Source of the DNA: Mytilus californianus
Lineage: Eukaryota
DNA: 64,000 nucleotides
Direction: 5' to 3'
Assembly (NCBI RefSeq): GCF_021869535.1
Contig: NW_026262690.1
Span: forward strand, 28,520,001-28,584,000
In this document: positions 1-58,776 of the stretch, piece after piece
Numbering within the stretch: position 1 is the stretch's first letter
Layout of the letters: every line of letters begins with the position of its first letter
Translations under genes and position numbers: made by a program
Notes under the pieces: model-generated
The model's database searches: none
What the model saw: the letters and a program-made list of their open reading frames with translations, nothing else
What the model was told of the DNA's origin: nothing

Positions 1-3000
1 CTGCTATTGTTCTACATTTTGTAAAGGCATTATTGAGTACTGCTATTGTTCTAAATTTTGTAGAGGCATTGTAAAGAGTGAGTACTGCTATTGTTCTACA
101 TTTTGTAGAGGCATTGTAAAGATTGAGTACTGCTATTTTTCTACATTTTGTAGTGGCATTGTATAGATTGGGTACTGCTATTGTTCTTCATTTTGTAACA
201 GCATTGTATAGATTGAGTACTGCTATTGTTCTACATTTTGTAACGGTATTGTATAGATTGAGTACTGCTTTTGTTCTACATTTTGTAGAGGCATTGTATA
301 GATTGCTCACTGCTATTGTTCTACATTTTGTAGAGGCATTGTAAAGATTGAGTACTGCTATTTTTCTACATTTTGTAACGGCATTGTATAGATTGAGTAC
401 TGCTTTTGTTCTACATTTTGTAGAGGCATTGTATAGATTGCTCACTGCTATTGTTCTACATTTTGTAGAGGCATTGTATAGATTGAGTACTGCTATTGTT
501 CTACATTTTGTAGAGGCATTGTATAGATTGCTCACTGCTTTTGTTCTACATTTTGTAGTGGCATTGTTTAGATTGAGTACTGATATTGTTCTACATTTTG
601 TAGTGGCATTGTATAGATTGAGTACTGCTATTGTTCTGCATTTTGTAGAGGCATTGTATAGATTGCTCACTGCTATTGTTCTACATTTTGTAGTGGCATT
701 GTGTAGATTGGGTACTGCTATTGTTCTACATTTTGTAGAGGCATTATATGGATTGATTTCTGCTATTGTTCTACATTTTGTAGAGGCATTGTATTGATAG
801 AGTTCTGCTTTTGTTCTACATTTTGTAGAGGCATTGTATAGATTGAGTACTGCTATTGTTCTACATTTTGTAGTGGCCTTGTGTAGATTGAGTACTGCTA
901 TTGTTCTACATTTTGTAGTGGCATTGTATAGATTGAGTACTGCTATTGTTCTACATTTTGTAGAGGCATTGTATTGATTGAGTTCTGCTATTGTTCTACA
1001 TTTTGTAAAGGCATTGTATTTATTGAGTTCTGCTATTGTTCTATATTTTGTAGAGGCATTGTATAGATTGCTCACTGCTATTGTTCTACATTTTGTAGAA
1101 GCATTGTAAAGATTGGGTACTGCTATTGTTCTACATTTTGTAACAGCATTGTATAGATTGAGTACTGCTATTTTTCTACATTTTGTAGAGGCATTGTATA
1201 GATTGAGTACTGCTATTGTTCTACATTTTGTAGTGGCATTGTGTAGATTGAGTACTGCTATTGTTCTACATTTTGTAGAGGTATTGTATAGATTGAGTAC
1301 AGCTATTGTTCTACATTTTGTAGTGGTATTGTAAAGATTGAGTACTGCTATTGTTCTACATTTTGTAGAGGCATTGTAAAGATTGAGTACTGATATTGTT
1401 CTACATTTTGTAGAGGCATTGTAAAGAGTGAGTACTGCTATTGTTCTACATTTTGTAGAGGCATTGTAAAGATTGAGTACTGCTATTTTTCTACATTTGT
1501 AGTGGCATTGTATAGATTGGGTACTGCTATTGTTCTTCATTTTGTAACAGCATTGTATAGATTGAGTACTGCTATTGTTCTACATTTTGTAACGGTATTG
1601 TATAGATTGAGTACTGCTTTTGTTCTACATTTTGTAGAGGCATTGTATAGATTGCTCACTGCTATTGTTCTACATTTTGTAGAGGCATTGTAAAGATTGA
1701 GTACTGCTATTTTTCTACATTTTGTAACGGCATTGTATAGATTGAGTACTGCTTTTGTTCTACATTTTGTAGAGGCATTGTATAGATTGCTCACTGCTAT
1801 TGTTCTACATTTTGTAGAGGCATTGTATAGATTGAGTACTGCTATTGTTCTACATTTTGTAGAGGCATTGTATAGATTGCTCACTGCTTTTGTTCTACAT
1901 TTTGTAGTGGCATTGTTTAGATTGAGTACTGCTATTGTTCTACATTTTGTAGTGGCATTGTATAGATTGAGTACTGCTATTGTTCTGCATTTTGTAGAGG
2001 CATTGTATAGATTGCTCACTGCTATTGTTCTACATTTTGTAGTGGCATTGTGTAGATTGGGTACTGCTATTGTTCTACATTTTGTAGAGGCATTATATGG
2101 ATTGATTTCTGCTATTTTTCTACATTTTGTAGAGGCATTGTATTGATAGAGTTCTGCTTTTGTTCTACATTTTGTAGAGGCATTGTATAGATTGAGTACT
2201 GCTATTGTTCTACATTTTGTAGTGGCCTTGTGTAGATTGAGTACTGCTATTGTTCTACATTTTGTAGTGGCATTGTATAGATTGAGTACTGCTATTGTTC
2301 TACATTTTGTAGAGGCATTGTATTGATTGAGTTCTGCTATTGTTCTACATTTTGTAAAGGCATTGTATTTATTGAGTTCTGCTATTGTTCTATATTTTGT
2401 AGAGGCATTGTATAGATTGCTCACTGCTATTGTTCTACATTTTGTAGAAGCATTGTAAAGATTGGGTACTGCTATTGTTCTACATTTTGTAACAGCATTG
2501 TATAGATTGAGTACTGCTATTTTTCTACATTTTGTAGAGGCATTGTATAGATTGAGTACTGCTATTGTTCTACATTTTGTAGTGGCATTGTGTAGATTGA
2601 GTACTGCTATTGTTCTACATTTTGTAGAGGTATTGTATAGATTGAGTACAGCTATTGTTCTACATTTTGTAGTGGTATTGTAAAGATTGAGTACTGCTAT
2701 TGTTCTACATTTTGTAGAGGCATTGTAAAGATTGAGTACTGATATTGTTCTACATTTTGTAGTGGCATTGTGTAGATTGAGTACTGCTATTGTTCTACAT
2801 TTTGTAGTGGCATTGTGTAGATTGGGTTCTGCTATTGTTCTACATTTTGTAGTGGGATTGTAAAGATTGAGTACTGCTTTTGTTCTACATTTTGTAGTGG
2901 CATTGTACAGATTGGGTACTGCTATTGTTATATATTTTGTAACAGCATTGTATAGATTGAGTACTGCTATTGTTCTACATTTTGTAGTGGCATTGTGTAG

Positions 3001-4290
3001 ATTGGGTTCTGCTATTGTTCTACATTTTGTAGAGGCATTGTATAGTTTGACTTCTGGTATTGTATAGATTGAATACTGCTATTGTTCTACATTTTGTAGT
3101 GGCATTGTATATATTGGGTACTGCTATTGTTTTACATTTTGTAGAGGCATTGTATAGATTGAGTACTGCTATTGTTCTATATTTTGTAGAGGCATTTTAT
3201 AGATTGAGTACCGCTATTGTTCTACATTTTGTAGTTGCATTGTATAGATTGGGTACTGCTATTGTTCTACATTTTGTAGAGGCATTGTAAAGATTGGATA
3301 CTGCTTTGTTCTACATTTTGTAACAGCATTGTATAGATTGAGTACTGCTATTGTTCTACATTTTGTAGTGGCATTGTTTAGATTGAGTACTGCTATTGTT
3401 CTACATTTTGAAGTGGTATTGTATAGATTGGGTACTGCTATTGTTCTACATTTTGTAACAGCATTGTATAGATTGAGTACTGCTATTGTTCTACATTTTG
3501 TAACAGCATTGTATAGATTGAGTACTGCTATTGTTCTACATTTTGTAACAGCATTGTATATATTAAGTACTGCTATTGTTCTAAATTTTGTAGAGGCATT
3601 GTATAGATTGAGTACTGCTATTGTTCTACATTTTGTAGGGCATTGTATAGATTGCTCACTGCTATTGTTCTACATTTTGTAGAGGCATTGTAAAGATTGG
3701 GTCATGCTATTGTTCTACATTTTGTAGAGGCATTGTAAAGATTGAGTACTGCTATTGTCCTACATTTTGTAGAGGCATTGTATAGATTGAGTACTGCTAT
3801 TGTTCTACATTTTGTAGTGGCATTGTATATATTGGGTACTGTTATTGTTCTACATTTTGTAGAGGCATTGTATAGATTGAGTACTGCTATTGTTCTACAT
3901 TTTGTAGAGGCATTTTATAGATTGAGTACCGCTATTGTTCTACATTTTGTAGTTGCATTGTATAGATTGGGTACTGGTATTGTTCTACATTTTGTAGAGG
4001 CATTGTAAAGATTGGGTACTGCTATTGTTCTACCTTTTGTAGTGGTATTGTATAGATTGAGTACTGCTTTTGTTCTACATTTTATAGAGACATTGTATAG
4101 ATTGAGTCATGCTATAGTTTTAGAAGCTACGTTTTGTAGTGAAATTGTATAGATTGGGTCATGCTATTGTTTTAAAAACTACGTTTTGGTGGCATTGTAT
4201 TAACTGAGTTATGCTATTATTTTAGTAATAAATTTTGTAGTGGCATTGTATAGAATAAGTTATGCTATTATTTTAGAAAGTACATTTTGC
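1..4290. repeat. 45-bp tandem satellite/minisatellite array (about 95 monomers, truncated by the window start)
   Basis: Consensus GATTGAGTACTGCTATTGTTCTACATTTTGTAGAGGCATTGTATA repeats head-to-tail with point variants. Monomers decay from about 4090 to 4290. Confidence 0.98.
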
Positions 4291-6685: not shown

Positions 6686-8699
6686 GATGTAAAATGAATC
6701 ATTTCAATCTATTCTGATTTAAAACTATAACAATCTTTAAATTTATACGATTAAAACCGAACAACGCTTGTATAATTCTAAAATTTCAAAAATGTTAGGT
6801 ATTTACAACAGAGACTGCATAGATATGCTTTTAACAAAAATAGTAATGTGAAATATGAACTGGTACATTTCTAAAATTTAAAATACACAAAGTCAATAAT
6901 CCAGGTAGACCAATTGTTTCTGCCAATGACCACCCTACAGAGAAAATATCAGAATTTATTGACTTTCATTTAAGACCACATGTAGAAAAATATACAATCC
7001 TATATACAAGATACAACACAATATCTTAAGAAAATGGAATCCTTGAACCCTCTCCCACCTGTAACAGTCCTAGTCTCGCTTGGTGTTACCTCTCTCTATA
7101 CTAACATCCCCCATGACGATGGCATTGAAGCCTGTAGGGAAGTCTTGAACTCTCGCAATACCTTACACCCACCAACTGAATGTCTAGTCAAGCTTCTAAC
7201 TTTGGTATTGAAATGCAATAACTTCACATCCAATGGTGAACACTTTCTCCAGGTTATTGGAACAGCACTCGGAACAAAGATGGCCCCGTCTTATGCCAAT
7301 ATTTTTATGGGCAAATTAGAACAGCAAATTCTCAATTCTTCTCTTTATCAACCTCTCTCTTGGTTCCAATTCATCGACGAAATTGACATGAAGTGGGATA
7401 ATACTGAACAAAAACTCAATGTGTTCATTCAACATGCCAACGATGCCCATCCCTCAATAAAATTCACTCTCAACTGAGAGGAAGGTCTGGATTGCATTCT
7501 TAGTCGCTACGATGGCCGTTCGTACGTTTGTGAAATGGCTGTTCTGACTAGCCAACATACTGTTTACCACACTTACACTGTAGAAGATACACAGCATGTG
7601 TAGTTTTGCAATTAACATTGCAATTAACATTGCAAAATTAACATTGCAATTAACATTGCAAAATATGGTGTATTCCGTACCAGTGGAGTGACTGTTAAAA
7701 GTCTGGGTATTCAGTATTTGCTTACAAGTCAAACATAGTTTGTTTCCGCATCCCTTGCAAGACACTACAAACGAAGAGCCTGATTTAGAGGATAAATCAG
7801 TTCTCACCAGCATGTCTTTAAGGTTTTTGGGCCTACGGAAAGCCAGTACAGGTGGCTCGGGAAAGATCTTGGATAGTTTAGGATGTTTTTCGATTTCTTT
7901 CCTATTTTCGCGGATAAGGTGTGATAACTTGTCAAATTTAGGATGGTAAGTCAGCAGTAACGGCACTCTTTTGGTGACCTTTTTGTCTTTATATTGTAAA
8001 GTTCGTCTCGGCTGATGTTGTTACCACGAAAAAAACCTTTATCAATATCTTTTCTTCTGTATCCCCGATTTTTTAGGTGACCGCGAAGTTCTCGTAGTCG
8101 CCTTTTTGCAGTATCATTGGTGGAGCAAATCCGTTTTATTCGTATGGCCTGGCTATAGGGAATGCTCTCGGTGCAATGTTTAGGATGACAACTCAAAGGA
8201 GAAAGATATTGATGTTTCACTTGCGTAGCAGTGTCAAGAAATGGGATCTTAGAGTCAGAGATTTCATAAGTGAATTTTATTGAGGGATGAGCATCGTTGG
8301 CATGTTGAATGAACACATTGAGTTCTTGTTCAGTATTATCTCACTTCATGTCTATATAGTCGATGAATCGGAACCAAGAGAGAGGTTGATAAAGAGAAGA
8401 ATTGAGAATTTGCTGTTCTAATTTGCCCATAAGAATATTGACAAAAGACGGGGTCATCTTTGTTCCCATTGCTATTCCATTAACCTGGAGAAAGTGTTCA
8501 CCATTGAGTATGAAGTTATTGCATTTCAAAACCAAAGTTAAAAGCTGGACTAGACATTCAGTTGGTGGGTGTAAGGTATTGCGAGAGTTCAAGACTTCCC
8601 TAGTATAGAAAGAGGTAACATCAAGCGAGACAATGATTGTTTCAGGTGGGAGAGGGTTCAATGATTCCATTTTCTTAAGATAGTGTGTTGTATCTTGGA

Positions 8700-8905
8700 C
8701 TGTAAATTCAGAAATTATTGCGTGCATCTATTATTGCCATTTTTGAAGAATGGACTAAATGCGAGATTAATTGTAGCGATTTCAGGAAAAGGTGCATACA
8801 GATTTATGCATCAGATTTCAGAATGTGAGTTCTTATTATTGCGATACTCACACAGTCGCATTATTCGCATTAATTAAAACCTCGCAATAATTTTTGAATT
8901 TACAG
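8700..8905. mobile_element. 206-bp MITE with about 23-bp TIRs at a TA target (Tc1/mariner-pogo-like non-autonomous element), inserted in the Penelope RT
   Basis: Left end CTGTAAATTCAGAAATTATTGCG, right end CGCAATAATTTTTGAATTTACAG followed by TA. The empty site GTATCTTG-TA-TATAGGA is preserved in the other inverted-repeat arm (about 7000-7015, reverse strand). The left TSD reads GA. Confidence 0.85.
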
Positions 8906-12389: not shown

Positions 12390-14870
12390 TTACGATGGCG
12401 GACAAGATAGAACGTGTTGAATGTCGCTCATAAGAAAATTAGTTTACTAAGTAACCAAGAAAGAATTCTGATATATGACTGTGTGCTATCATTAGTATTT
12501 TGGATATTGAATATTTAATTCTACACAATAAAGCAAGAATGTACAACAGAGTCAAGTAATTAAGATAGTGTGGTACTCTGAAATTGACCATTGTTTACCA
12601 TTGTAAATAAAAATGGCGGACACTCAAAATCACATTGTAAACAACTCATTAGTGGACACTCCTGTTGGAAATTCTATCGAAAATGCACGTCAAGTTCTAT
12701 ATGGACAGCATCTAATCTATGTTCCTTTCAACACACCAGCAAACCTGCATGGCAACCCACAACAGAAATTGGTTTTCTCCGATCAACCCTCCCCCCCCCC
12801 AAATTTCGAATGCACAAAACACACAAATCTGTCTAGAATCTGTATTAAATGACATTTATACAAAATTATCCCATCTTGATGCTTTACCGTCGATTGATAA
12901 ACGTTTAGGGGGGATCGAAAGCAGATTTTCATCATTAGAGACAGAACTTTCCGAAGTTAAACAAGATATGAAGCAAATAGAAAATAGAGTAACTGGATCT
13001 GAGCACGTAGTTAATAAAATGGAAAACAGATTTCGCTTTATAACGGAAGAATTTGATAACATGAGACAAGAAAATATGGAACTTAAGAAAAGCTTCTTGA
13101 AGTTCAGTCAAGGTCGATGAGGGAAAATCTTCTTTTTGGTGGCATCCTCGAAGATCCGAGGGAAAAAGAAGACCCGGATAATGTCGAAATGGAAGCAGTC
13201 CTTAAGAAATTTATCAAAGAAAAACTTAAGATAAATGAAGAAATAAAATTTCATATTGTTCACCGCCTCCGATCACGCAAGGATGCCAAACCAAAAACCA
13301 TAGTGGCTAAATTTGAAATCCGAAAGGACAGAAACAAAGTTCTTAGAGCTGCCCCGGCCAAACTGAAAGATACATCTTTCAGCGTCTTTGAACAATATCC
13401 ATATGAAATGGTAGAAAGAAGAAATATTCTATGGCCTATTTTCAAACGAGAACAGCGTCTAGGAAATCATGTCCGTCTTAAGGATAACAAATTATACGTA
13501 AATGGCCACAGAATCTATCCTGAAGATGTAATTGAAGCTCAGAAAAATGCACTCAATGTACCCAACAACCACTCTTCTCAAGACAACATGTATCCAGCTC
13601 AACAGTGCAGTCAGTTTCTAAGGGAACACTTTGGCTAACGAGACGAACCAAAAGCAGGTTTTGGTCGTCCCCGCTACATGTAGGACAGGCAAACAAGAGG
13701 ACAGTTGAACTTAAAACCCAGTATTATATGTAACAATTCTCACCCATTAAATATTTTTAATGCTTAAATGTATGTGGCCTAAAAAGTAGATTAATATTTA
13801 AAGAATTTACTGATTTGATTGAACTAAATGATATTTTTGTATGTATTGAGTCAAAACTAGATGATTTAGATGAGCTTAATTTGCCTGAGGGGTATGATTA
13901 TTTTTCCAAAAATAGAAAAAAATTTGAACGAAAATCTGGAGGTATAACAGTCATTTACAAAAATTGTTTAAAAAAATTTCTTACATTTATTGACACGGAC
14001 TCTGAGTTTGTACTTAGGGTTCCTTAGGGTTAAAGTAGATATTCCAATGCAATTAACTAAAATTATGTTTGGTTGTATTTATATACCCCCAGAAAATTCA
14101 AAGTATTCATCCAAGGATGTCTTTGATGAAATTGAAACGGAATTAATTACGTTAAAAGATCAAAGCACTTCAATTGCACTATTAGGCGATTTTAATGCCA
14201 GACCAGGGTCTCTTTGTGATTTTATTATACCAGACGATGAACTTTCAAAAATTTTGAATTATGATGGAATAGATGCTTATATGACTATCATAATTCATGT
14301 TTATATAATGTACCCTTACAAAGATCGTCCGAGGACAAAGGTCGCATCAATGTATATGGTAACAAACTTTTGTAATGATGTAAAAACAATTGTTTATATA
14401 TTGCTAATGGCAGAATTGGAAGCGAAAAAAATTTGGGCAAAGTAACTAGCAAAGAAACTAGTTTAGTTGATTACTTAATAGTATCAGCAGATTTATTCCC
14501 CTATATTTTAGAATTTGAAGTGATTGATTTTGATCCGTTATTTTCAGATATTCATTGTAGATTGCATTTCAATCTTTCAGCGATGTTACCGAACAAATTT
14601 GCTTGATAAAAACAATTCATCGAATGTGCCTAGTAGGCATATTCGTTGGATTGGTGACAAAGAGATCAATTTGTTGACAGCGTCGAAAGAAAATTGACCA
14701 TTGATAACTTGTCGAACCAGTTAGATACGCTTGATATAACTAATGAAAAATGTCAAACCGACCTAAACGAGTTAGTCGAAAGTTTAAATAAACAGTCCGG
14801 TATGCGGTTTAAATAGAACAAAAGAATTCGAACTCTTGTGTTTAGAAGGTAGAAAAGTGAAATGAACTTT
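12390..14870 (+). mobile_element. 5' half of a decayed CR1/L2-group LINE: ORF1 (coiled coil + RRM-like) and AP-endonuclease part of ORF2
   Basis: ORF1 pieces lie at 12613-13120 (coiled coil) and 13117-13638 (RENLLFGGI..VHRL...KPKTIVAKF..DRNKVL...FSVFEQYP). APE motifs are LNVCGLK (about 13765), CIESKL, SGGITVIYK, GCIYIPPENS and LGDFNAR. Frameshifts are present, with a poly-C tract near 12790. Confidence 0.88.
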
Positions 14871-19898: not shown

Positions 19899-20640
19899 CT
19901 GGTATGATTGCCAATGAAACAACTATCCACCAGAGTTCAAATGACGTAGATGTATATAGATATAAGAAGATGTGGTATGAGTGCCAATGAGACAACTCTC
20001 CATCCAAGTCAAAGTAAATCATTATAGCAATTATTGGTCACCGTACAGCCTTTAGCAATGAGAAAACCCAAACCATATAGTTCGCTATAAAAACCCAGAC
20101 TAGAAAAATGGAAAACAATTCAAACGAGAAAAAAAACTTGACAGACATTTACCGACGACAACCTCGGAATTACAGGCTCCTGACTTCAGACAGGCATATA
20201 AAATATGTGGTTGATAAAACATGTTTGTAAGCATTCATCCCTCCTCTAACCTGGCCCAGTGGTGTGCATTTGTAACAGCACAACATAAGAACTAACTGTA
20301 AAAATCAGGTGCAAATGGCTATAGATCGATACGAAGCACGCAAAAGCACCCAAACTATAAGCAATAAACACAAAGCAATTCATTGTATATAACAATAAGA
20401 AGACGTGGTATGATTGCCAATTGGAAAACTATCCACCAGACACCAAATGGCATAGAAGTTAACAACTATAGGTCACCTTACGACCTTCAACAATGAGCAA
20501 AACCCCTACCGCATAGTAAGCTATAAAAGGCCCCGAAATGACAAATGTAAAACAATCCAATCAAGAAAACTAACGGCCTGATTTATGCACAAAACAATAA
20601 ACGAAAAACAAATATGTTATCCAGCAACAAACGACACCCA
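19899..20640 (-). repeat. Cluster of three copies of abundant dispersed repeat family A (SINE/LINE-tail-like)
   Basis: Shared terminus AGAAGATGTGGTATGA(G/T)TGCCAATGAGACAACT at about 19899, 19964 and 20397. The sense strand is inferred from the common end. Confidence 0.8.
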
Positions 20641-20829
20641 CAGGAATTTTATTATGTACTGTTAGCAGATTCGAATGAAATTTTGGTAACAATCATCCAA
20701 AACAAAATGGAATACACTATATCTTCCATCTGTTTACTATAGTGTTGATTTAATTTATCAAGCAACAACATTTGATCTGGGATGGTTATGCACGAAGCAA
20801 CACTTCCCTAGAGATACCACGATATTTGG

Positions 20830-20835
20830 TTTATT
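20830..20835 (-). promoter_or_regulatory. Candidate polyadenylation signal AATAAA
   Basis: Reverse strand TAAATAAA overlaps the TAA stop codon. Confidence 0.4.
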
Positions 20836-21908
20836 TACGACCGATATGACGCGTTGATGTTTTCATTATACATTAAAAATCCTAAATAAAACCATGGATC
20901 ACCGGATAGAACTTTTTGTTTCCCTGGTAGGTATGATTGAACTTCGACGGTAATGGGATTTTTCTTTCTCTCCTCAGCTGTGTACATTGAATATAAAATA
21001 TGTTGTTCTACGTTCATCAGTTCCTGTGACAAATAATACAAAACTCTATCTTTATATTGAGATTCAAACTTTTTTAAAACGTCTGGTTTTCCTAAAAATA
21101 GTCCACCACCTATCCAATTCTTATTTCCGAGTATGATAGATCTTGCTGAAACTTTCTTTAAAGGTACATTATATACTTGAGTGACACCAACTTTGGAATT
21201 GTCAAAATCAGTAGGAACTTCTAAATAGAAATATTTTTTACGACTAGAAATATCACGGAAATAGCCTAAGTCTAGCCAGGAATAGTAGTCTGATGCCAGT
21301 AGTTTTGAATTAATTGCTTTTGCAACTAGAGTCAGCTTTGAATGGGTCATACATGTGTAATCCGATATGTATGTATTCGGATAGTGCTTTGGGTATCCCG
21401 GTTTGGAATAAAGCTTGGCTATTTGTGGTTTGATGTGGAATGACCATAGGTCATCTCTAGAGAACAGTATTATTTGTGTGGTAAAAGCTGAATTGTTTCG
21501 TTGTTCTGTAAAAAAATCGGCAAACTTTTTGGAATCTGTATAAATTATCAATGGATTTTTAAGATATTTGTACGCAGACATCCAAACTTTATATGACTCC
21601 GGTGTTCGGATATTTGAAACTGAACCTTTCGGAAATTTCCCGAGATTGAAAAATGCTGTTACAACAGTGAGACTTCTATTTGTATTTGTCCATAGATCCT
21701 GATATGGTTCCTTACTTTTTGTGTTTTTCCATGAATCCTGAGAATTGTCCGAGGCTACCTGTTTCTTTGGTTCTAAGTTTGACTGATTAAATGGTAACAA
21801 CTGTGTGACCATTTTCGATCTACCAACCTTCCTAGTCACCAATGTAAGAAATATAACAAGTAGGATGGATATAATGATCGTAGGACGGAAAATCTTCTTC
21901 TTCATCAT
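20835..21908 (-). CDS. HtrL/YibB(WlaTC)-like protein, 357 aa, predicted type II membrane (Golgi-type) putative glycosyltransferase-like enzyme; single coding exon
   Basis: Intact 1074-bp ORF. Basic N-tail plus hydrophobic anchor (IIISILLVIFLTLV) and a stem region. Family-like motifs are TVVTAFFNLG, RTPESY, NPLIIYTD, YPNT...Y...HSKLTLVAKAI and DYYSWLDLGYFR. A splice acceptor (TTACAG) lies 12 nt upstream of the ATG and AATAAA overlaps the stop. Confidence 0.85.
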   Translation of the reverse strand: MMKKKIFRPTIIISILLVIFLTLVTRKVGRSKMVTQLLPFNQSNLEPKKQVASDNSQDSWKNTKSKEPYQDLWTNTNRSLTVVTAFFNLGKFPKGSVSNIRTPESYKVWMSAYKYLKNPLIIYTDSKKFADFFTEQRNNSAFTTQIILFSRDDLWSFHIKPQIAKLYSKPGYPKHYPNTYISDYTCMTHSKLTLVAKAINSKLLASDYYSWLDLGYFRDISSRKKYFYLEVPTDFDNSKVGVTQVYNVPLKKVSARSIILGNKNWIGGGLFLGKPDVLKKFESQYKDRVLYYLSQELMNVEQHILYSMYTAEERKKNPITVEVQSYLPGKQKVLSGDPWFYLGFLMYNENINASYRS

Positions 21909-21920
21909 GTTTTGATCTCT

Positions 21921-21940
21921 CTGTAAGATAATGTAAGTAC
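21921..21940 (-). promoter_or_regulatory. Splice acceptor of a 5'-UTR intron of the HtrL-like gene
   Basis: Reverse strand reads TACTTACATTATCTTACAG|AGAGATCAAAAC-ATG, with the AG at 21922-21921. Confidence 0.6.
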
Positions 21941-23074
21941 AATCAATCTGCAGTTGAATATTATAAATTATTACACTACATGTTGAAATTTAACTTTTTT
22001 GTTTGTTTGATTTGTGTTGGGTTTGTTTTTTATTTGTTTTTTTTTTTTTTTGAGGGGGGGGGGGGGGAAGGATTTTTTTTTTTTTTTTTTTTTTCTCAAT
22101 ACAAAGGGAACGTTTTAGAGTTACAAATAGCTCGGCTGCACAAATTTATAGTATGCCACCCTTTAGTCTTTATCAATAAAAAAAAAACGGGCATAGCAAA
22201 AATTAATAATTTGAAAACTAATAATAAAAAAATTTCAATATTGTAGTTTGAATAACAAATATTGGATATTGCGATAAAGCAGATTACTACTCTCAAAACA
22301 ATGCCGCCAACCTCGGCTTCGCTTCGAGTGGTTTTTTTAGGGTATCAATCAGCTCTTTCACCCTTTCAGTTGTGCCTAATTTATACTCCGAAATAAAACG
22401 TTATTTCAGATGCATTATATCTAATATTGACATTTAAAGTCGAAATCAACAAATAATCATAATTTTCGAGGAGAAGGTAATCAGTTATTAATTTTTATGG
22501 TCTGCCTTGATAAAACTATTAATTTGCTAGAATAAATTATATCAAAATGTGTTTTAATGTATTTCAACTGACAGTGAATGTGTTGGGTATATCACTTCAT
22601 CTATGTTATAGCTAATATTAAGTTATTAACTTGGAATTAACTGTACTTAGGGACAGGACAACTCTTTTTAACCCAATCCCTTGTGTTTCTAAAATCCGTT
22701 TTATTTTTTTTGTTTGTTTTTTTTTTCAATTACTTTCGCGTTTTTCTGTGATATATTTACACAAATGTATATATACTAGAAATAATGTATTTACGATGAG
22801 CCTCTCTATATATATTATCAGTGACAGCTGTGGATAGTAACCTAAGAATTGATAGTAAATAGTAAATACACGTCATTTTTAGTATATTTTTAGTATGGGT
22901 TCAGAAAACACGTTTACAAGATGGGTATCTTGTAAATGACTAAAGACACAATTCAGCTAATTAAATTGCATATAAAAAGCATGGATTTTTCTTTCTATTT
23001 TGAATTAAAGTAAAGTTATTGAGTGATTCGTTCTTTATAAGATTAAAGTTAGGCAGGTTGTTAAGTAGACGATT

Positions 23075-23860
23075 TAACAGGTCGACAGGTTAAATGGTTG
23101 ACAGGTCAGCAGATCGACAGGTTAACTGGCCTACTAATATTTAGTTAATATATATAAGGTCAGGGGTAAGGTTTAGGTTTACAGTTACGTTATGGATCTA
23201 CTGTTAGGGTAATAGTCAGGGTATGGGAAATGGCTTGGGTTTGGGTAAAGGGTTTTGATTACGGATAAGATTTAGGTTAGGGTAACGGTTTTGGTTTAAG
23301 CTTAGTAGGGTTAAGGTTTATGGTTAAGGTTAGGGTTATGATCAGGGTTAGGCTTACGTTAAGGATAAGGGTGAGGGCTACAACATGGTAAGGGTAAAGG
23401 GTGAGGTGTGTGGAAAAGGTTGGCGTTAGGGTTATGTTTAGGGTTGCGAAATAAAAACATGAAACGAATTGATCTATAAAATTATTGAGATTTGTCCTAT
23501 CGAAATGTCAACCTGTCGACTTGATGCCATGTCGACCTGTACAATTGTTGTCGTTTTGATTCTTTGAACTGTTTCCAAACAATTGTAAAATCTTATAATG
23601 AATTATTTAAAAAAAAGATATTTGTCCTGTTGACCTGTCGACTATTTAACATTTTAGCTAATTACCTGTCGACCTTCTAACATCTTGACCCACCCTCTTG
23701 CTTATATGTCGACTAGATAAACAATTGACAACTAGATTCTCGACCTGTAACAGTTGATCTGCTTGTCAAGACAATGTTATAGTCTCCTGTCCTGTCGCAT
23801 TTCTGATATACCAGCATGTTAAAATTGAGAAATTATGTGACCTGTCGACTTCCTAACATA
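23075..23860. repeat. Degenerate (TTAGGG)-like tract (about 23155-23445) flanked by inverted clusters of GTCGACAGGT / ACCTGTCGAC motifs
   Basis: About five perfect TTAGGG among TAAGGG, TTTGGG, TCAGGG and TGAGGG variants. GTCGACAGGTTAA repeats lie on the left (23075-23130) and (TG)ACCTGTCGAC repeats on the right (23510-23850). Confidence 0.7.
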
Positions 23861-25424
23861 TCTACTCAATTGTTGACCAATTTTTTTGTTTGTAGACTTG
23901 AAACTAGTTAACATTATACTATTTAATGTGTGCCCTTTTGACCAGCTGACTTCTTGCCCTGTTGACTTGTTGAGCGAAATATATGTTTATCTATGTTGTG
24001 TTTTTAATAGATGACAATTGATTTTTGAACCTTTTCTCCATAGTAAATTAAACGTTTATTTTGAAAGTAAGGAAAGTTTGGAAAGCGCAGTAATTTGTGC
24101 TGTTTCGCCGTTTAAATATAAAAACAAATTGCTGGAACTAGATTAACGTACACAATACTAGTGCTTGGACTGTATTGTCTTTATCTTGTAAACAATATTA
24201 GATAGAGAAATATGACAAACCAAAAGTGATCAAAATGTCAATTTCTCTCTACTTCCTAATGTCATCAAAATTACCAGATGACTCTCATTAAAGGAGTTAT
24301 TGCACATACATGACAATGTTTAGCTAATTTTCATGTTTTTGCCTATTATCTAAAAAAAATGAAAGAAGAAATGTATAATTAATTATGGCAAAAATAACCA
24401 GCATTACAAGATCTACATATATGTCAAACAACTGAAAACAATGAATGACTCTTGAAGGAAAAGTTGCCCTTAAACTACGATTTTTTTACTAATTCTCGTG
24501 TCAGTCGTAAATTTTTTTTTAAAGATCTTCTCTAAAACTGCTGAAACAAATTTCAATTAATAAATAGGCTGAATGACCCTATAGTATGTAGTTTAAAATT
24601 TGTGTTTTTTTTTATTCTGGTGAGTCAACAAACATGACCGCCATGTCTTAAAGTAGAACAAAAGGGTATAATGCATTAACTGTCTTGCATCGTTAAAACC
24701 AAAATCTGACAGGGCAAAAATGCCCCGTCTTCCTTTCTAATAAAACTAAAATGTTCAGATAGCTCCTTAAAAAATATAACAAAAATACCGAATTCTAATG
24801 GAAATTTAAAAAAGGATCGTCATAAAAACTGAGTCAGTTAAAGGAGAAATAAGCTTTTAATGTTATATATTTTGTGCCTCGTTGCTCAATTAGCTATATA
24901 TAGCCTGTCTACATTCGGGCGAATAAGGCCTTGCTGTGGCTTTTAGTAATGATATTCATGTCTAACACATCAGAAATATAGGGAAATGTTACTCCTTAAA
25001 GCTTGAAAAACACTGCTATTTATCGCTGTATTTTTATGAAGTTATACACATGCCTGACTTAATTAACGTCTTTTTTTACAATTTGGAAACCCAATAAACT
25101 CATGGAGTGACAGAACATGTCACTACGTTGCATGCTCATAACATCTATTTTATTTATTTCATTTTTGGAAGTGCTTAGCTGTTTAACCTTGGTATGTTTG
25201 TGTCCAGTTTATGATTAATATTTTGCATGATTATGTGTATGTCATGTATTATATATGTATATCACTTATGTCTTTTTAGGTTTGTCAATATGGTTTAAAA
25301 GCTCAGTAGAGCTTGTGTTGTCTGTGTTATAAACTTGTCGGATTTTTAATAAAGCTTTTTTATATATTGTAGTGTATTGCCTCTGGCCTTTGTTAGTCTT
25401 GTATGTTTTTTTTTAATTTTAGTT

Positions 25425-25556
25425 CATTTATATGTTTCGGAGTGCGGGATTTTCTCGCTGTGTTGATGACCCATTGGTGGCCTTGGGCTGTTTTCTGCTC
25501 TTTGGTCGGGTTGTTGTCTCTTTGACACATTTCCCATTTCCATTCTCAATTTTATA
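25425..25556 (+). repeat. Dispersed repeat fragment ending GTCTCTTTGACACATTTCCCATTTCCATTCTCAATTTTAT (retroposon tail related to family A)
   Basis: The 3' end resembles the family A terminus (TTGTCTC..TTG.CA..) and is followed by an AT tail. Confidence 0.5.
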
Positions 25557-26793
25557 TGTAAATTTCAACCAGTTGATGAACCCATCCGTTGTCCTACGGC
25601 AAAGCCCATGTTTGAAATGGGATTTCTTTTAATCTTACTGTCACTTTTGTCCGTCTTTTCACATTGTGCAAATCCAGCATGTGGTCTTAAATGTAAAAGT
25701 ATCTTACTTTTAATAGTTTCAGTTAATTTCATCAAAAACTTTCTTAACATAACATCCGGTATTCATCCACACAATTTTTTTCTTTTCTTAATTCCATTCC
25801 ATAAGAATAAATAGCATTATCGATTCTTTCTCGGAATTTTTGATAAATGATAATTTCATTTACTCTTTGATTCTTTTTTATATATAATTCTAGATATTAG
25901 AATCAAATTTTCCTGAGTCATAATTTGCAAGCAGTTATATATAAGTGGCAACTGTAGTATCCTGATTTTCAAATTTTGTAAATCCATTCTGAATATACAA
26001 GCCAGAGGAAAGAACTGAGGGAACTGCATATTTCAGATATTTTTGTAAAAATTAGCATCGGGTTGACATCCGGAACTAAACGGCATTCGAACATATTTCA
26101 GAGAAAACTTATCCCTTTACTTCCAACATCATTTTGTTTTCTAACAACTCATTTATTAATGCTCAAAATCTATCAAAATTGCATTGCTGAGCCAATTTAA
26201 AATTCGTTTTATATTTCTTCGTCACAGTATTTTAGATTCTCATTGCAACAACATGAATTTGAGTACTGTGAATTTTATTAAAGTTTGAAAGACGTTTTGA
26301 AAATGCCCCTGTTGTGAAAATTATGTGGATTTAACCTTAATCTTTATATTTTTGATATTGATATTTTCTCTTTTCTTTTTTCTTTTTCTTTTTTCGTTTA
26401 ACTGATTTAAATTCAGGATACTTATCGTGTTCTGTAAGCAGATTCGAATCAAATTTTGGTAACAATAATTTAGAATGGAAGACATTTTAGGTTTAAGGGT
26501 TCTAAGGATTGTCACATGTGATAAATTTTTCATATCAGCCCGCTAATCACCATTTCGGAAAATATGGAATTCACGTAAATTTAATGCTATTATCATACTG
26601 TAAAAATTATAAGTTATTTACTCTTAGTATATGATAACAGCGTTTATTACTTATGCAGCAAAAATGCTGCAATCTGATTGGTTAATTACCCCGGTGTAAA
26701 AAAATAACACCCCACCCTTGTTCACCCCGGGATAAATAAAATTTTGCCCCTGATTACACCAATATAACTTATATAATTCATAATAAATAAAAG

Positions 26794-56978: not shown

Positions 56979-58776
56979 TATGCATTATTTGAAATACTCT
57001 TTCTAAGAAAGAAAAAATTTGTATTGTGCTTTTGTTGATTTTGAAAAATCATTCGACTTTTGTTCACCGTAATTCATTATTTTTTAAACTTGTTAAAACA
57101 AATATTACTGGCAAATTTTAAAGAATTATACAAAATATGTATAAAGATGTAAAATTATGTATCAAACATAACAATGAAAATTCAGAAATCATTTTTCTCT
57201 GAAATTGGAGTAAGACAGGGAGAAAATTTATCGTCTGTATTCTTTTCATTGTATCTAGATGATTTACAATAATATTTAGAAACACAAGGTATTAGAGGTG
57301 CAGAATCTATCAACAAAGATGCTGAAAATGAACTTTCAGTATATTCAAAATATTTTTGCTTTTATGTGCAGATGATACCATTTTATTAACAGAGTCTGTT
57401 GGAGATTTACAATTTATGCTCGATAATTTTTCACAATATTGTTTAATGTGGAAAATTAGAGTAAATGTGGATAAGACTAAAATTTTTATTTTTTCAATAG
57501 GCAGCATGTCAAAAAATACTAATTTCTTTTTGAATAATAGAGAACTAGAAATATTTAAAAATTATGAATATCTTGGTATCTTTTTGACTTTTGTAAAAGT
57601 GGGTCATTCCCGTAAACAAGTTAGTATCTTAAAGAACAAGCAACTAAAGCTATGCATGGATTATTGAAGAAATTTAGAAGAAATAACTTATCTATTGAAT
57701 GTCAAACTGATTTGTTTTAAAAAAATAGTAGAACCTGTAATATTATATGGATCAGAAATTTGGGGTTTTGAAAATTTAGATGTTCTTGAAAGTATACAGT
57801 TGCGATTTTGTAAAATTATGTTGCATTTGAAACAATCAACACCTAACTAAATTGTATATGGTGAGCTAGGCATATTTCCTATATCGTTTCACATAAAGGT
57901 ACGTATGATAAATTTTTGTTGTAGACTGGTTAGAGGAAATGAAACAAAATGTTCCGCATAATTATATAAATTGTTACATGTTTACTACACAGATTACGGT
58001 TATCAATCTAAGTGGTTAAAATTTATAAAGAATATTTTAGATGTTTGTGGTATGTAAAATATTTAGCAGAACCAAACTGATTTTTCGTCAATATGGATTT
58101 CAAAACGTGTAGAACAGAAACCTAAGGATCAATTTATACAATTTTGGTATTCAGAAATGTTCAAATCTCCTAAGGCATTGTGCTATAGATTATTCAAACT
58201 CAAAAAATGCAATTTGCCAAGAAGCGAAAGAGTGTGTCCTCTCTGTGACACGATGGAAATTGGTGACGAATACCACTATATCATGTAGCTACTTTAATAA
58301 TGTTAGAAATGATGCTTCGCCCTTTTTGTCATGAAAATGTTAACATTACTATTTTCTTCAAACAATGTAATCATATTAAAAATTCTGATAAACTGTGTAA
58401 ATTGATTAAGAACGTCCAAGGAAAGGTTCCTCCAGGTTAGAACTTTTTAGTGTTTATCATATACAGGTATGTTATTCACACATGCACTACAAATTTGTAT
58501 ATTGTTAATATGTATATGTTATCTATAGCATTTGCTTTATTAGAATAAAGCATTCATTCATATTTGTCTAAAGTTCACTTATAATTTGTACGAAGGATAT
58601 ATGATAATTTAACATGATAGAAATTATGGCCTTTTATATATTTTTAACAGTAATAAATTTTAATTGCCTTGAGGAAACAGTTCTTGTATTCAACTCTTCT
58701 TAAACACTTTTCAACTGTTCATAATTTTAGGGTCTTGATTGTTTAAAAAGTGGCCATAAATGCAGGTGTTTGTGAA

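What the first reader, a model, noticed from the sequence alone, without database searches (positions are those of the whole stretch)
20835..21940. Lone intact, single-coding-exon HtrL/YibB-like gene in a sea of dead transposons
Seen: the only long non-repetitive undisrupted ORF (357 aa), while all neighbouring TE ORFs are frameshifted. It has a eukaryotic signal anchor, N-glycosylation sequons (NQS, NRS, NNS), an upstream splice acceptor and AATAAA. Established: the HtrL/YibB family is known mainly from bacteria, where E. coli htrL lies in the waa LPS-core region, and its biochemistry is poorly defined. Inference: this is an animal homologue retargeted to the secretory pathway, possibly from ancient horizontal transfer given the intronless catalytic domain. 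It may modify mucus or surface glycans or act at the host-microbe interface. The family assignment rests on recalled motifs (TVVTAFFNLG, NPLIIYTD, DYYSWLDLGY).
Basis: partly seen in the sequence, partly recalled or inferred. Interest (0 to 1): 0.75.

Follow-up and report, generated by a model that had tools for sequence, protein, structure and literature searches.

The report
Mussel HtrL-like Golgi glycosyltransferase gene
This is a real, transcribed and conserved mussel gene for a membrane-anchored enzyme of the poorly understood HtrL/YibB family, probably a sugar-transferring enzyme. It belongs to an old animal gene family and is not a recent import from bacteria.

Summary
A 357-aa ORF lies on the minus strand at 20835-21908. 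It matches Pfam HtrL_YibB above the curated cut-off and keeps every residue invariant across animal, bacterial and viral members.

It is a working gene:
- RNA reads cover it on one strand only.
- Orthologues sit at the same collinear locus in Mytilus californianus and M. galloprovincialis.
- dN/dS is 0.14-0.22 in the domain.

The protein has a basic tail, a 17-residue hydrophobic anchor, a disordered stem and a confidently predicted GT-A fold. The fold is nearest to retaining glycosyltransferases (GT8, GT6, GT24). The usual DxD motif is replaced by W-x-D-x-G.

The horizontal-transfer reading is not supported as a mollusc event. The family is large and is found in molluscs, annelids, nemerteans, brachiopods and nematodes. 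Animal members form one clade, at most 31% identical to any bacterial protein sampled. Homologues in Lingula and Lymnaea have introns inside the domain. An ancient transfer into early animals remains possible. The nearest non-animal sequences sampled are from giant-virus contigs and a Parachlamydiaceae genome, on long branches.

The scan holds no earlier HtrL note. Substrate and biochemistry remain unknown. It is a new member of a known, uncharacterised kind.

The parts
20835..21908 (-). Complete coding sequence, 357 codons plus TAA stop, in a single coding exon
   Evidence: ORF list. Orthologous CDSs in M. californianus and M. galloprovincialis are also uninterrupted, 1071 nt each. dN/dS is 0.20-0.36.
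21909..21920 (-). 12 nt of 5' untranslated sequence at the start of the coding exon
   Evidence: Sequence. The Logan contig L001 of an allele or orthologue begins within about 2 nt of this point.
21921..21935 (-). Splice acceptor: AG at 21921-21922, preceded by a pyrimidine-rich tract
   Evidence: The motif is conserved in three Mytilus genomes. Stranded RNA depth falls from 5-17 to 0.09 upstream of here. RNA contigs carry 34-126 further letters that do not lie on the adjacent DNA. The non-coding first exon was not located within 21922-26299.
21834..21884 (-). Hydrophobic signal anchor (residues 9-25), preceded by KKK..R
   Evidence: Highest Kyte-Doolittle window at residues 6-25. AF2 helix at 7-29. 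Bacterial and viral homologues lack any such N-terminal extension.
21711..21824 (-). Low-complexity, poorly conserved stem (residues 29-66), with sequon N41
   Evidence: pLDDT is below 50 for residues 29-66. This part of the alignment is variable. dN/dS of the first 76 codons is 0.3-1.1, against 0.14-0.22 for the domain.
20859..21677 (-). HtrL/YibB catalytic domain (residues 78-350), predicted GT-A fold
   Evidence: Pfam PF09612. AF2 pLDDT is above 90 over almost the whole domain. Foldseek and VIA matches are to GT6, GT8, GT24 and GT34 enzymes. All family-wide invariant residues are kept.
21264..21278 (-). W211-L-D213-L-G215 motif at the end of a beta strand, where GT-A enzymes usually carry DxD
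   Evidence: W211 and D213 are invariant and G215 is at least 95% conserved in 30 animal, 56 bacterial and 58 viral-contig sequences. Strand 208-212 is in the model. The equivalence with DxD is inferred, not superposed.
20630..20834 (-). 3' untranslated region, with the probable poly(A) signal AATAAA at 20648-20653. The lower end is approximate.
   Evidence: RNA reads and contigs run past the stop to at least 20745. Six reads join 20696 to 20742, which matches a 45-nt indel also seen in M. californianus. The conserved block ends in AATAAA.

Best explanation
The ORF is a functional nuclear gene of a Mytilus-group mussel.

**Gene structure.** It has at least two exons. One is an unlocated non-coding leader. 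The other runs from 21920 to about 20630 on the minus strand and holds the whole coding sequence.

**Protein.** The gene encodes a type II membrane protein: a short basic cytosolic tail, a 17-residue anchor, a flexible glycosylated stem and a luminal HtrL/YibB domain with a GT-A fold.

**Most likely function (inferred).** It probably works in the Golgi or secretory pathway as a nucleotide-sugar-dependent glycosyltransferase acting on secreted or surface glycoconjugates. The fold neighbours suggest a retaining enzyme. A single invariant Asp (W-x-D-x-G), together with invariant Lys191, Arg137, Arg218 and Gln302, stands where a classical DxD metal site would be. Donor and acceptor are unknown.

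**Origin.** The gene was inherited vertically within molluscs, as one member of a large old animal subfamily.

**Shown:** the gene is real, transcribed, under constraint, syntenic, a member of the family and predicted to have this fold.
**Inferred:** membrane topology, Golgi location, glycosyltransferase chemistry.
For: **ORF and motifs:**
**Family:** Pfam hit above the cut-off. All 17 residues conserved across animals, bacteria and viral contigs are kept.
**Expression:** stranded raw RNA reads lie on one orientation only, over 20700-21905, at depth 5-17 with 6% of the run read. Depth is essentially nil from 22100 to 25300 (under 1 in one repeat bin). RNA-library contigs from two further studies cover the CDS.
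**Orthology:** orthologues are 93% and 89% identical, each as a single coding exon, at a locus collinear over 12 kb upstream.
**Constraint:** dN/dS is 0.14-0.22 in the domain.
**Structure:** AF2 mean pLDDT is 86.9, with a helix at 7-29 and disorder at 29-66. Foldseek gives E about 1e-6 to alpha-1,3-GalT, ABO transferases, BoGT6a, LgtC, XXYLT1 and LARGE1. VIA gives Z 10.5-9 to UGGT, LARGE1, BoGT6a, XXT1, LgtC and glycogenin.
**N-terminal extension:** the median in animal members is 57 aa, against 5 aa in bacteria, none of which looks like an anchor.
**Bacterial context:** bacterial relatives sit in LPS/LOS core loci among glycosyltransferase genes (PMC4172580).
**Phylogeny:** animals form one clade with support 98/97 to 100. 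The window groups with Mytilus, then with the other pteriomorph bivalves.
Against: - No member of the family has a demonstrated activity in the literature I could search.
- The DxD motif typical of metal-dependent GT-A enzymes is absent.
- No sequence-level link to GT8 was found (hhalign E 0.08 and 0.5), nor to any solved structure.
- Nucleotidyltransferases with the same fold also score Z 8-9, so other group-transfer chemistry is not excluded.
- TM scores are modest, 0.32-0.53.
- The RNA reads and contigs differ from the window by about 3-5%. They show expression of an allele or a very close orthologue, not of this exact copy.
- The first exon was not found.
- Topology and Golgi residence rest on hydropathy and analogy only.
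Confidence: 0.7

Rival explanations
1. One reading: the gene, or the mollusc family, comes from a horizontal transfer from bacteria into molluscs, and the intronless catalytic domain is the trace of that event.
For: - The family was first described in bacteria (PMC4172580).
- The coding sequence is uninterrupted in three Mytilus species.
- In Pinctada and Pecten the catalytic domain is one exon.
Against: - The best bacterial match among 185,579 species genomes is 31% identical; most are 21-27%.
- Animal members form one clade that is not nested in any sampled bacterial group.
- The family is present in five animal phyla.
- Lingula has three introns in the gene and Lymnaea five, and two and three of them respectively lie inside the domain.
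- The branching order within pteriomorph bivalves is broadly in line with the accepted species relationships (my own knowledge).
Confidence: 0.03
2. The animal subfamily as a whole began with one very old transfer into an early animal, before the split of spiralians and nematodes. The donor would be a cell-associated microbe or a giant virus. Since then the genes have been inherited vertically. This is compatible with the best explanation for the gene itself.
For: - One fully supported branch (100/100, length 1.16) separates mainstream bacterial and phage HtrL from a side holding the animals, four giant-virus MAG contigs and a Parachlamydiaceae MAG (same split).
- Two giant-virus proteins share the animal C-terminal DPWFYL block, and the profile alignment covers the whole domain.
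- Intron positions in Lingula and Lymnaea do not coincide. This fits an ancestor with an intron-free domain and later gains.
- I saw no vertebrate or arthropod member among the named hits.
Against: - All these lineages sit on long branches, and the order among them is unresolved (50/43).
- The root is unknown, so the direction of transfer cannot be read. Viruses may have captured a eukaryotic gene.
- Only the best 150 of 2990 hits were visible, so non-animal eukaryotes were not surveyed.
- A coral Pfam table lists the domain (PMC6214176) and one crinoid record exists. Both would push the origin deeper and make plain vertical descent with losses equally good.
Confidence: 0.3
3. The protein is not a glycosyltransferase. 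It could be a secreted or luminal effector or binding protein, as proposed for C. elegans HTRL-1 among antimicrobial genes. Or it could use the GT-A/nucleotidyltransferase fold for different chemistry, such as phosphotransfer or nucleotidyl transfer.
For: - No DxD motif.
- Nucleotidyltransferases score Z 8-9.
- HTRL-1 is described as secreted and restricted to the pharynx, and is grouped with immune genes (PMC8989417).
- A de novo peptide from snail mucus weakly matched an HtrL_YibB protein (63% identity, E 4e-4; PMC11206429).
Against: - The top fold matches by both aligners are glycosyltransferases.
- Bacterial members lie in LPS/LOS loci with glycosyltransferases.
- The tail-anchor-stem-domain layout is that of Golgi glycosyltransferases (established knowledge).
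- Strict conservation of polar residues across domains of life points to catalysis, not binding alone.
- The saposin link for HTRL-1 rests on a Panther pattern only.
Confidence: 0.15
4. The ORF is bacterial contamination, an assembly artefact, a pseudogene or a transposon passenger.
For: It stands alone among decayed retroelement fragments and satellites, and it belongs to a family named as bacterial.
Against: - The locus is collinear with two independent Mytilus assemblies.
- GC content (0.349) is within the range of the rest of the window.
- The splice acceptor and 3' UTR are conserved.
- RNA coverage is strand-specific and confined to the gene.
- dN/dS is well below 1.
- The nearest paralogue-like sequences are at most 72% identical, so the reads at 95-97% identity belong to this gene.
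Confidence: 0.01

Closest known systems
E. coli HtrL (YibB) and the bacterial HtrL_YibB family (Pfam PF09612), including C. jejuni WlaTC and A. baumannii OCL5 HtrL
   Same: Same Pfam domain. About 23% identity over 246 residues with E. coli HtrL. Shared invariant residues include the T-x-V-T...G start, K191, W-x-D-x-G, R218 and Q302.
   Different: Bacterial proteins are 260-310 aa, begin at the first beta strand and have no anchor or stem. The mussel protein scores far below the NCBIfam equivalog cut-off, 64 against 265 bits. It has a distinct C-terminal WFYLG block and lies in a separate clade. The bacterial genes lie in LPS/LOS loci.
C. elegans HTRL-1 (T11F9.12)
   Same: An animal protein with a PF09612 domain and a secretory-pathway signal. 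It is the only animal member given a gene name in the papers I found (PMC8989417).
   Different: [quoted passage not shown] That paper states the domain is otherwise found only in bacteria. The spiralian members found here contradict that statement. I did not have the sequence, so I made no direct comparison.
Retaining GT-A glycosyltransferases: GT8 (LgtC, glycogenin, XXYLT1, LARGE1 xylosyltransferase domain), GT6 (alpha-1,3-GalT, ABO, BoGT6a), GT24 (UGGT)
   Same: Predicted fold: Foldseek E about 1e-6, VIA Z 9-10.5 over about 190-205 aligned residues. The eukaryotic ones share the type II anchor-stem-domain layout (established knowledge). BoGT6a also lacks DxD and is metal-independent (entry title).
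   Different: Sequence identity is 8-14% and rmsd 4-8 Å. There is no significant profile match to the E. coli GT8 enzymes WaaO and WaaJ. There is no DxD. No family stands out from the rest of the GT-A list, so this is a fold resemblance and not membership.
Annotated orthologues LOC127737864 (M. californianus) and LOC143067475 (M. galloprovincialis)
   Same: 93% and 89% identical, the same length give or take one residue, a single coding exon and a collinear locus.
   Different: Both are labelled only 'uncharacterized protein'. The window copy has an extra ATG, where the other Mytilus sequences differ by a few nucleotides (4-5) just before the start.

Membership tests
Pfam PF09612 HtrL_YibB | Profile score above the curated gathering cut-off over most of the model | tested here: met
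   52.2 bits against 24.1, E 8.6e-14, model positions 1-242 of 267.
Pfam PF09612 HtrL_YibB | Residues conserved across animal, bacterial and viral members are kept | tested here: met
   T81, V83, T84, G90, Y106, N118, R137, T144, Y184, K191, W211, D213, G215, R218, G268, Q302 and W339 are all present.
NCBIfam TIGR02192 / NF008462 'protein YibB' (equivalog of E. coli HtrL) | Score above the equivalog cut-off | tested here: not met
   64.3 against 264.9 bits, and 51.9 against 342 bits. It is a distant relative, not an equivalent of the E. coli protein.
GT-A fold glycosyltransferase superfamily | A single Rossmann-like alpha/beta/alpha domain that superposes on known GT-A enzymes | tested here: met
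   AF2 pLDDT is above 90 in the domain. There are 224 Foldseek matches at E <= 0.001, and the 50 best listed are GT-A enzymes. VIA Z is up to 10.5. This rests on a predicted structure only.
GT-A fold glycosyltransferase superfamily | DxD (or a variant) metal and diphosphate-binding motif after the central strand | tested here: not met
   The position holds W-L-D-L-G, with one invariant Asp and a near-invariant Gly two residues on. Metal-independent GT-A enzymes exist, so this does not exclude the activity.
GT-A fold glycosyltransferase superfamily | Transfer of a sugar from an activated donor | not testable with these tools
   This needs an enzyme assay. I found no published activity for any family member.
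CAZy GT8 (and GT6) as a sequence family | Detectable sequence or profile similarity to family members | tested here: not met
   hhalign of the 32-sequence profile against WaaO gave E 0.084 and against WaaJ E 0.51. The profile search of PDB sequences found no glycosyltransferase. GT6 was not tested by sequence.
Type II Golgi glycosyltransferase architecture | Short basic N-terminal tail, one hydrophobic anchor, a variable stem, a C-terminal catalytic domain and luminal sequons | tested here: met
   Hydropathy and sequons. AF2 helix at 7-29 and disordered 29-66. Of 182 animal members, 143 have N-terminal extensions of 30 aa or more, and 73 of those have a strongly hydrophobic 17-mer. Localisation itself was not tested.
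Horizontally acquired gene (mollusc-level event) | The recipient sequences nest within a donor clade, and the gene is confined to a narrow recipient lineage | tested here: not met
   Animals form one clade outside the sampled bacterial clades. The family is present in Mollusca, Annelida, Nemertea, Brachiopoda and Nematoda.

The most novel reading that the evidence does not exclude
The animal HtrL-like proteins are an unrecognised family of secretory-pathway GT-A glycosyltransferases; I do not recall it being in CAZy and did not check. It is expanded in molluscs, uses a DxD-less and probably metal-independent active site, and entered an early animal lineage from a giant virus or an intracellular bacterium. 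If so, part of the spiralian and nematode glycan repertoire would be of microbial or viral origin.
Probability: 0.2. Interest if true: 0.6.

Novelty: new member of a known kind. Interest (0 to 1): 0.35.

Why it matters
The HtrL/YibB family had no demonstrated biochemistry in any organism in the papers I could search. The one paper that names an animal member states that the domain occurs only in nematodes and bacteria.

This work shows a large, constrained and expressed animal subfamily across spiralians, with the layout of Golgi glycosyltransferases and a GT-A fold that lacks DxD. That gives experimenters a eukaryotic, soluble-domain route to the activity of the whole family, including the bacterial LPS/LOS members.

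It also points to enzymes that may build lineage-specific glycans of mollusc mucus, byssus or shell matrix.

For this window the result is modest. The gene is an ordinary, already predicted 'uncharacterized protein', and the striking horizontal-transfer reading does not hold.

Tried and rejected
- **Solved structures by sequence.** The profile search found only chance Rab7 matches at E 0.18 or worse.
- **GT8 by sequence.** hhalign against the E. coli GT8 enzymes WaaO and WaaJ was not significant.
- **PHROGs.** No match for the mussel protein, a phage homologue or a giant-virus homologue.
- **ESM Atlas fold search.** It was closed. The Atlas feature search only returned the mollusc cluster itself.
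- **The non-coding first exon.** No stranded coverage or joint lies within 21922-26299, apart from two high-copy repeats. Read laying allows a single call, so the exon remains unlocated. The Logan contig L001 starts almost exactly at the acceptor, so it did not help.
- **Shared intron positions as proof of antiquity.** The Lingula introns (codon 219 and codon 289, both phase 1) and the Lymnaea introns (codons 112 and 197, phase 2; after 259, phase 0) do not coincide.
- **Gene structures for Ostrea P0019 and Octopus P0097.** Not on record.
- **A deuterostome member as proof of bilaterian age.** The one crinoid record (Anneissia) is 63% identical to a nemertean protein and under 40% to everything else. 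It may be contamination, so I do not rely on it.
- **The two other long ORFs.** They are artefacts of the satellite.
- **Literature.** I found no paper on biochemical function or on animal HtrL evolution.
Full report
**1. The observation.**
The window holds a 357-codon ORF on the minus strand, 20835..21908.

Eight ORFs in the window reach 150 aa. The only longer one (450 aa) and the next longest (295 aa), at 188-2424, are read through a 45-bp satellite that fills 1-4119. Its period is a multiple of three.

Other ORFs of 100 aa or more give only partial matches below the Pfam cut-offs. These are reverse transcriptase at 7034-7474, 8344-8727 and 57356-57664, and an endonuclease at 13990-14442. 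This fits decayed retroelements.

The gene is flanked by two very high-copy repeats, at about 20300-20700 and 25300-25700.

**2. Family.**
- Pfam PF09612 HtrL_YibB matches at E 8.6e-14, 52.2 bits against a cut-off of 24.1.
- The NCBIfam YibB equivalog models match at E 1e-17 but far below their cut-offs. The protein is a distant relative of E. coli HtrL, not its equivalent.
- Direct BLASTP with E. coli HtrL gives 23% identity over 246 residues.
- In Acinetobacter the family sits in a lipooligosaccharide outer-core locus and is listed as of unknown function (PMC4172580 and PMC10327509).

**3. It is a live gene.**

*Expression.* Raw stranded RNA reads of one run cover 20700-21905 at depth 5-17, with 6% of the run read. 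All have the first mate on the plus strand, which in most stranded libraries means a minus-strand RNA. Depth is essentially nil from 22100 to 25300 (under 1 in one repeat bin). Contigs from three further runs of two other studies (one an RNA-seq library; two whose RNA nature is a guess) cover the coding sequence.

These reads and contigs differ from the window at about 3-5% of positions. They show expression of another allele or a very close relative, not of this exact copy. The nearest paralogue-like sequences are at most 72% identical in protein, so the reads belong to this gene.

*Orthology.* Orthologues in M. californianus (93%) and M. galloprovincialis (89%) are also single uninterrupted coding sequences of 1071 nt. 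They lie at a locus collinear with the window over about 12 kb upstream. Non-coding identity there is mostly 71-91%, against 94% and 90% for the block holding the coding sequence.

*Constraint.* Nei-Gojobori dN/dS is 0.20-0.36 overall and 0.14-0.22 in the domain. It is 0.3-1.1 in the first 76 codons.

**4. Gene structure.**
- Twelve nucleotides upstream of the ATG there is a pyrimidine tract plus CAG, with the AG at 21921-21922. It is conserved in all three Mytilus genomes.
- RNA depth collapses there. RNA contigs carry 34-126 further letters that do not lie on the adjacent DNA.
- A Logan contig of an allele starts within about 2 nt of the acceptor.
- A spliced non-coding leader is therefore likely. 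I could not locate it within 21922-26299.
RNA runs on past it.
- A conserved block ending in AATAAA at 20648-20653 is the likelier poly(A) signal.
- The window has two ATGs in tandem; the orthologues have only the second.

**5. Protein anatomy.**
- The tail (MMKKKIFR) is followed by a 17-residue hydrophobic stretch, which is the highest hydropathy window. Then comes a poorly conserved stem.
- AlphaFold2 on a 32-sequence alignment gives mean pLDDT 86.9, a helix at 7-29, disorder at 29-66 and a compact alpha/beta domain from about residue 78 with pLDDT above 90.
- Sequons lie at N41, N77, N138 and N352. N77 sits in a block (T-N-x-S-L-T-V-V) that is the majority consensus of the 32 aligned sequences.
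- Bacterial and viral homologues start at the first strand, with a median N-terminal extension of 5 aa and none anchor-like. Animal members have a median extension of 57 aa.
- This is the layout of type II Golgi glycosyltransferases. Topology and location are inferred.

**6. Fold.**
- Foldseek against the PDB gives 224 matches at E <= 0.001. The top ones are alpha-1,3-galactosyltransferase, the ABO transferases, BoGT6a, LgtC, XXYLT1 and LARGE1, at E about 1e-6 and TM 0.32-0.53.
- An independent all-against-representatives alignment gives Z 10.5-9 for UGGT, LARGE1, BoGT6a, PBCV-1 A64R, XXT1, LgtC, GTB and glycogenin. Scores decline smoothly into other GT-A enzymes and nucleotidyltransferases at Z about 8.
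- The fold is GT-A, and the nearest neighbours are retaining enzymes. No single CAZy family stands out.
- Sequence profiles show no link to GT8 or to any solved chain.
- Across 30 animal, 56 bacterial and 58 viral-contig sequences, the conserved residues are T81, V83, T84, G90, Y106, N118, R137, T144, Y184, K191, W211, D213, G215, R218, G268, Q302 and W339. All are kept here.
- The classical DxD is replaced by W-x-D-x-G at the end of strand 208-212. I did not superpose coordinates, so the equivalence with DxD is an inference.

**7. Distribution and origin.**

*Size of the family.* A profile search of 1.84 billion representative proteins gives 2990 hits at E <= 0.001 and 270 at E <= 1e-30. The best 150 are all of the animal type.

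*Taxa named by their sources:*
- Bivalves: Mytilus, Pecten, Mizuhopecten, Ylistrum, Pinctada, Ostrea, Crassostrea, Saccostrea, Dreissena, Solemya.
- Gastropods: Patella, Haliotis, Littorina, Lymnaea, Batillaria, Babylonia.
- Cephalopods: Octopus, Argonauta.
- Annelids: Owenia, Capitella, Helobdella, Paralvinella.
- Nemerteans: Tubulanus, Lineus.
- The brachiopod Lingula and the nematode Soboliphyme.
- C. elegans HTRL-1 has been named in the literature (PMC8989417).
- A coral genomics table lists the domain (PMC6214176).
- One crinoid record exists. Its nearest relative is a nemertean protein at 63% identity, so I treat it as possibly contaminant.

*Bacteria.* Among one genome for each of 185,579 bacterial and archaeal species, the best match is 31% identical (Acinetobacter ursingii).

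*Trees.* In FastTree, quick IQ-TREE and careful IQ-TREE (mixture model) trees the animal sequences form one clade, with support 99, 100 and 98/97 respectively. The window sits with Mytilus inside a pteriomorph group whose branching is broadly in line with the accepted species relationships (my own knowledge). In the quick IQ-TREE the two nematode sequences branch first, with weak support (87) for the remainder; in the other two trees the base of the animal clade is unresolved.

*Introns.* Lingula has three introns and Lymnaea five. Two of the Lingula introns and three of the Lymnaea introns lie inside the domain. Pinctada has one, between stem and domain. Pecten also keeps the domain in one exon.

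*Conclusion.* An intron-free domain is therefore a feature of the pteriomorph branch and not of the family. A transfer into molluscs is not supported.

**8. What remains open on origin.**
- The viral collection holds many homologues: 236 confirmed stretches. Most belong to one uniform group of 261-269 aa proteins.
- Five of the best 80 loci lie on contigs named as giant-virus MAGs, and a sixth (L115) encodes a protein with the same ends as that of one of them.
- In the careful tree a 100/100 branch of length 1.16 separates mainstream bacterial and phage sequences from a side holding the animals, four giant-virus contigs and a Parachlamydiaceae genome.
- Two giant-virus proteins share the animal C-terminal DPWFYL block.
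- The intron positions of Lingula and Lymnaea do not coincide, which fits an intron-free ancestor.
- All these branches are long, their order is unresolved and the root is unknown.
- Non-animal eukaryotes were not surveyed, because only 150 hits are listed.
- An ancient transfer into an early animal is possible (I give it about 0.3). The direction of transfer, and plain vertical descent with losses, cannot be excluded.

**9. Function.**
No paper in the searchable library reports an activity for any member.
- WlaTC of C. jejuni was studied genetically in lipooligosaccharide synthesis. I know this only from a reference title.
- HTRL-1 is pan-pharyngeal and is grouped by its authors with antimicrobial genes.
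- A single de novo peptide from Cornu aspersum mucus weakly matched an HtrL_YibB protein (63%, E 4e-4).

My best reading is a secretory-pathway glycosyltransferase that modifies secreted or surface glycoconjugates. Its active site would be built around D213, K191, R137, R218 and Q302, and it may be metal-independent. I hold the glycosyltransferase step at about 0.6.

**10. Verdict.**
The gene is real, expressed and constrained. The horizontal-transfer interpretation fails at the mollusc level.

The gene is already predicted as an 'uncharacterized protein' in sister species, so this is a new member of a known but uncharacterised kind. The wider point of interest is that the animal subfamily is far larger and broader than the literature states, and that it offers a route to the unknown biochemistry of the HtrL family.

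Noticed in passing
window 1-4119: A 45-bp tandem satellite of about 92 copies at 89% match. Because the period is a multiple of three, it produces spurious ORFs of 450 and 295 aa with weak, meaningless Pfam hits.
   Followed up: partly
window 20300-20700 and 25300-25700: Two very high-copy repeats. RNA-library contigs pile up to depths of thousands, raw reads lie on both strands, and many reads join the two copies or run off into unrelated sequence. They look like an abundant transcribed short element.
   Followed up: no
window 20697-20741: A 45-nt stretch in the 3' UTR is skipped by six RNA reads and is absent from M. californianus. It is an indel between alleles or species, not an intron.
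   Followed up: partly
window 22030-22100: Long T and G homopolymer runs about 120-190 nt upstream of the start codon, inside the presumed last part of the 5' intron. The reads tool skipped this stretch as a repeat.
   Followed up: no
L144 (Pecten maximus) 1001-88612: Two catalytic-domain exons, 89% identical at the protein level, lie about 66 kb apart. In the annotation both are joined to the same first exon. This could be a tandem duplicate used as an alternative 3' exon, or a merged gene model.
   Followed up: no
P0217 (Anneissia japonica record) against P0237 (Lineus longissimus): The only deuterostome record of the family is 63% identical to a nemertean protein and under 40% identical to all others. 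This suggests contamination of the crinoid assembly, or a recent transfer between animals.
   Followed up: partly
L071, L117 (also L113, L139, L097), IMG/VR giant-virus MAG contigs: Giant-virus contigs encode 254-262 aa HtrL homologues. Two of them end in the DPWFYL block otherwise seen in the animal proteins. L097 carries the domain at the start of a 755-aa protein.
   Followed up: partly
L062-L141, IMG/VR contigs: One very uniform group of 261-269 aa HtrL homologues is common in environmental viral contigs (236 confirmed stretches in all). None matches a PHROG family.
   Followed up: partly
L051 (Parachlamydiaceae MAG): A homologue from an amoeba-associated chlamydial lineage falls on the animal and giant-virus side of the deepest well-supported split, on a long branch.
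   Followed up: no
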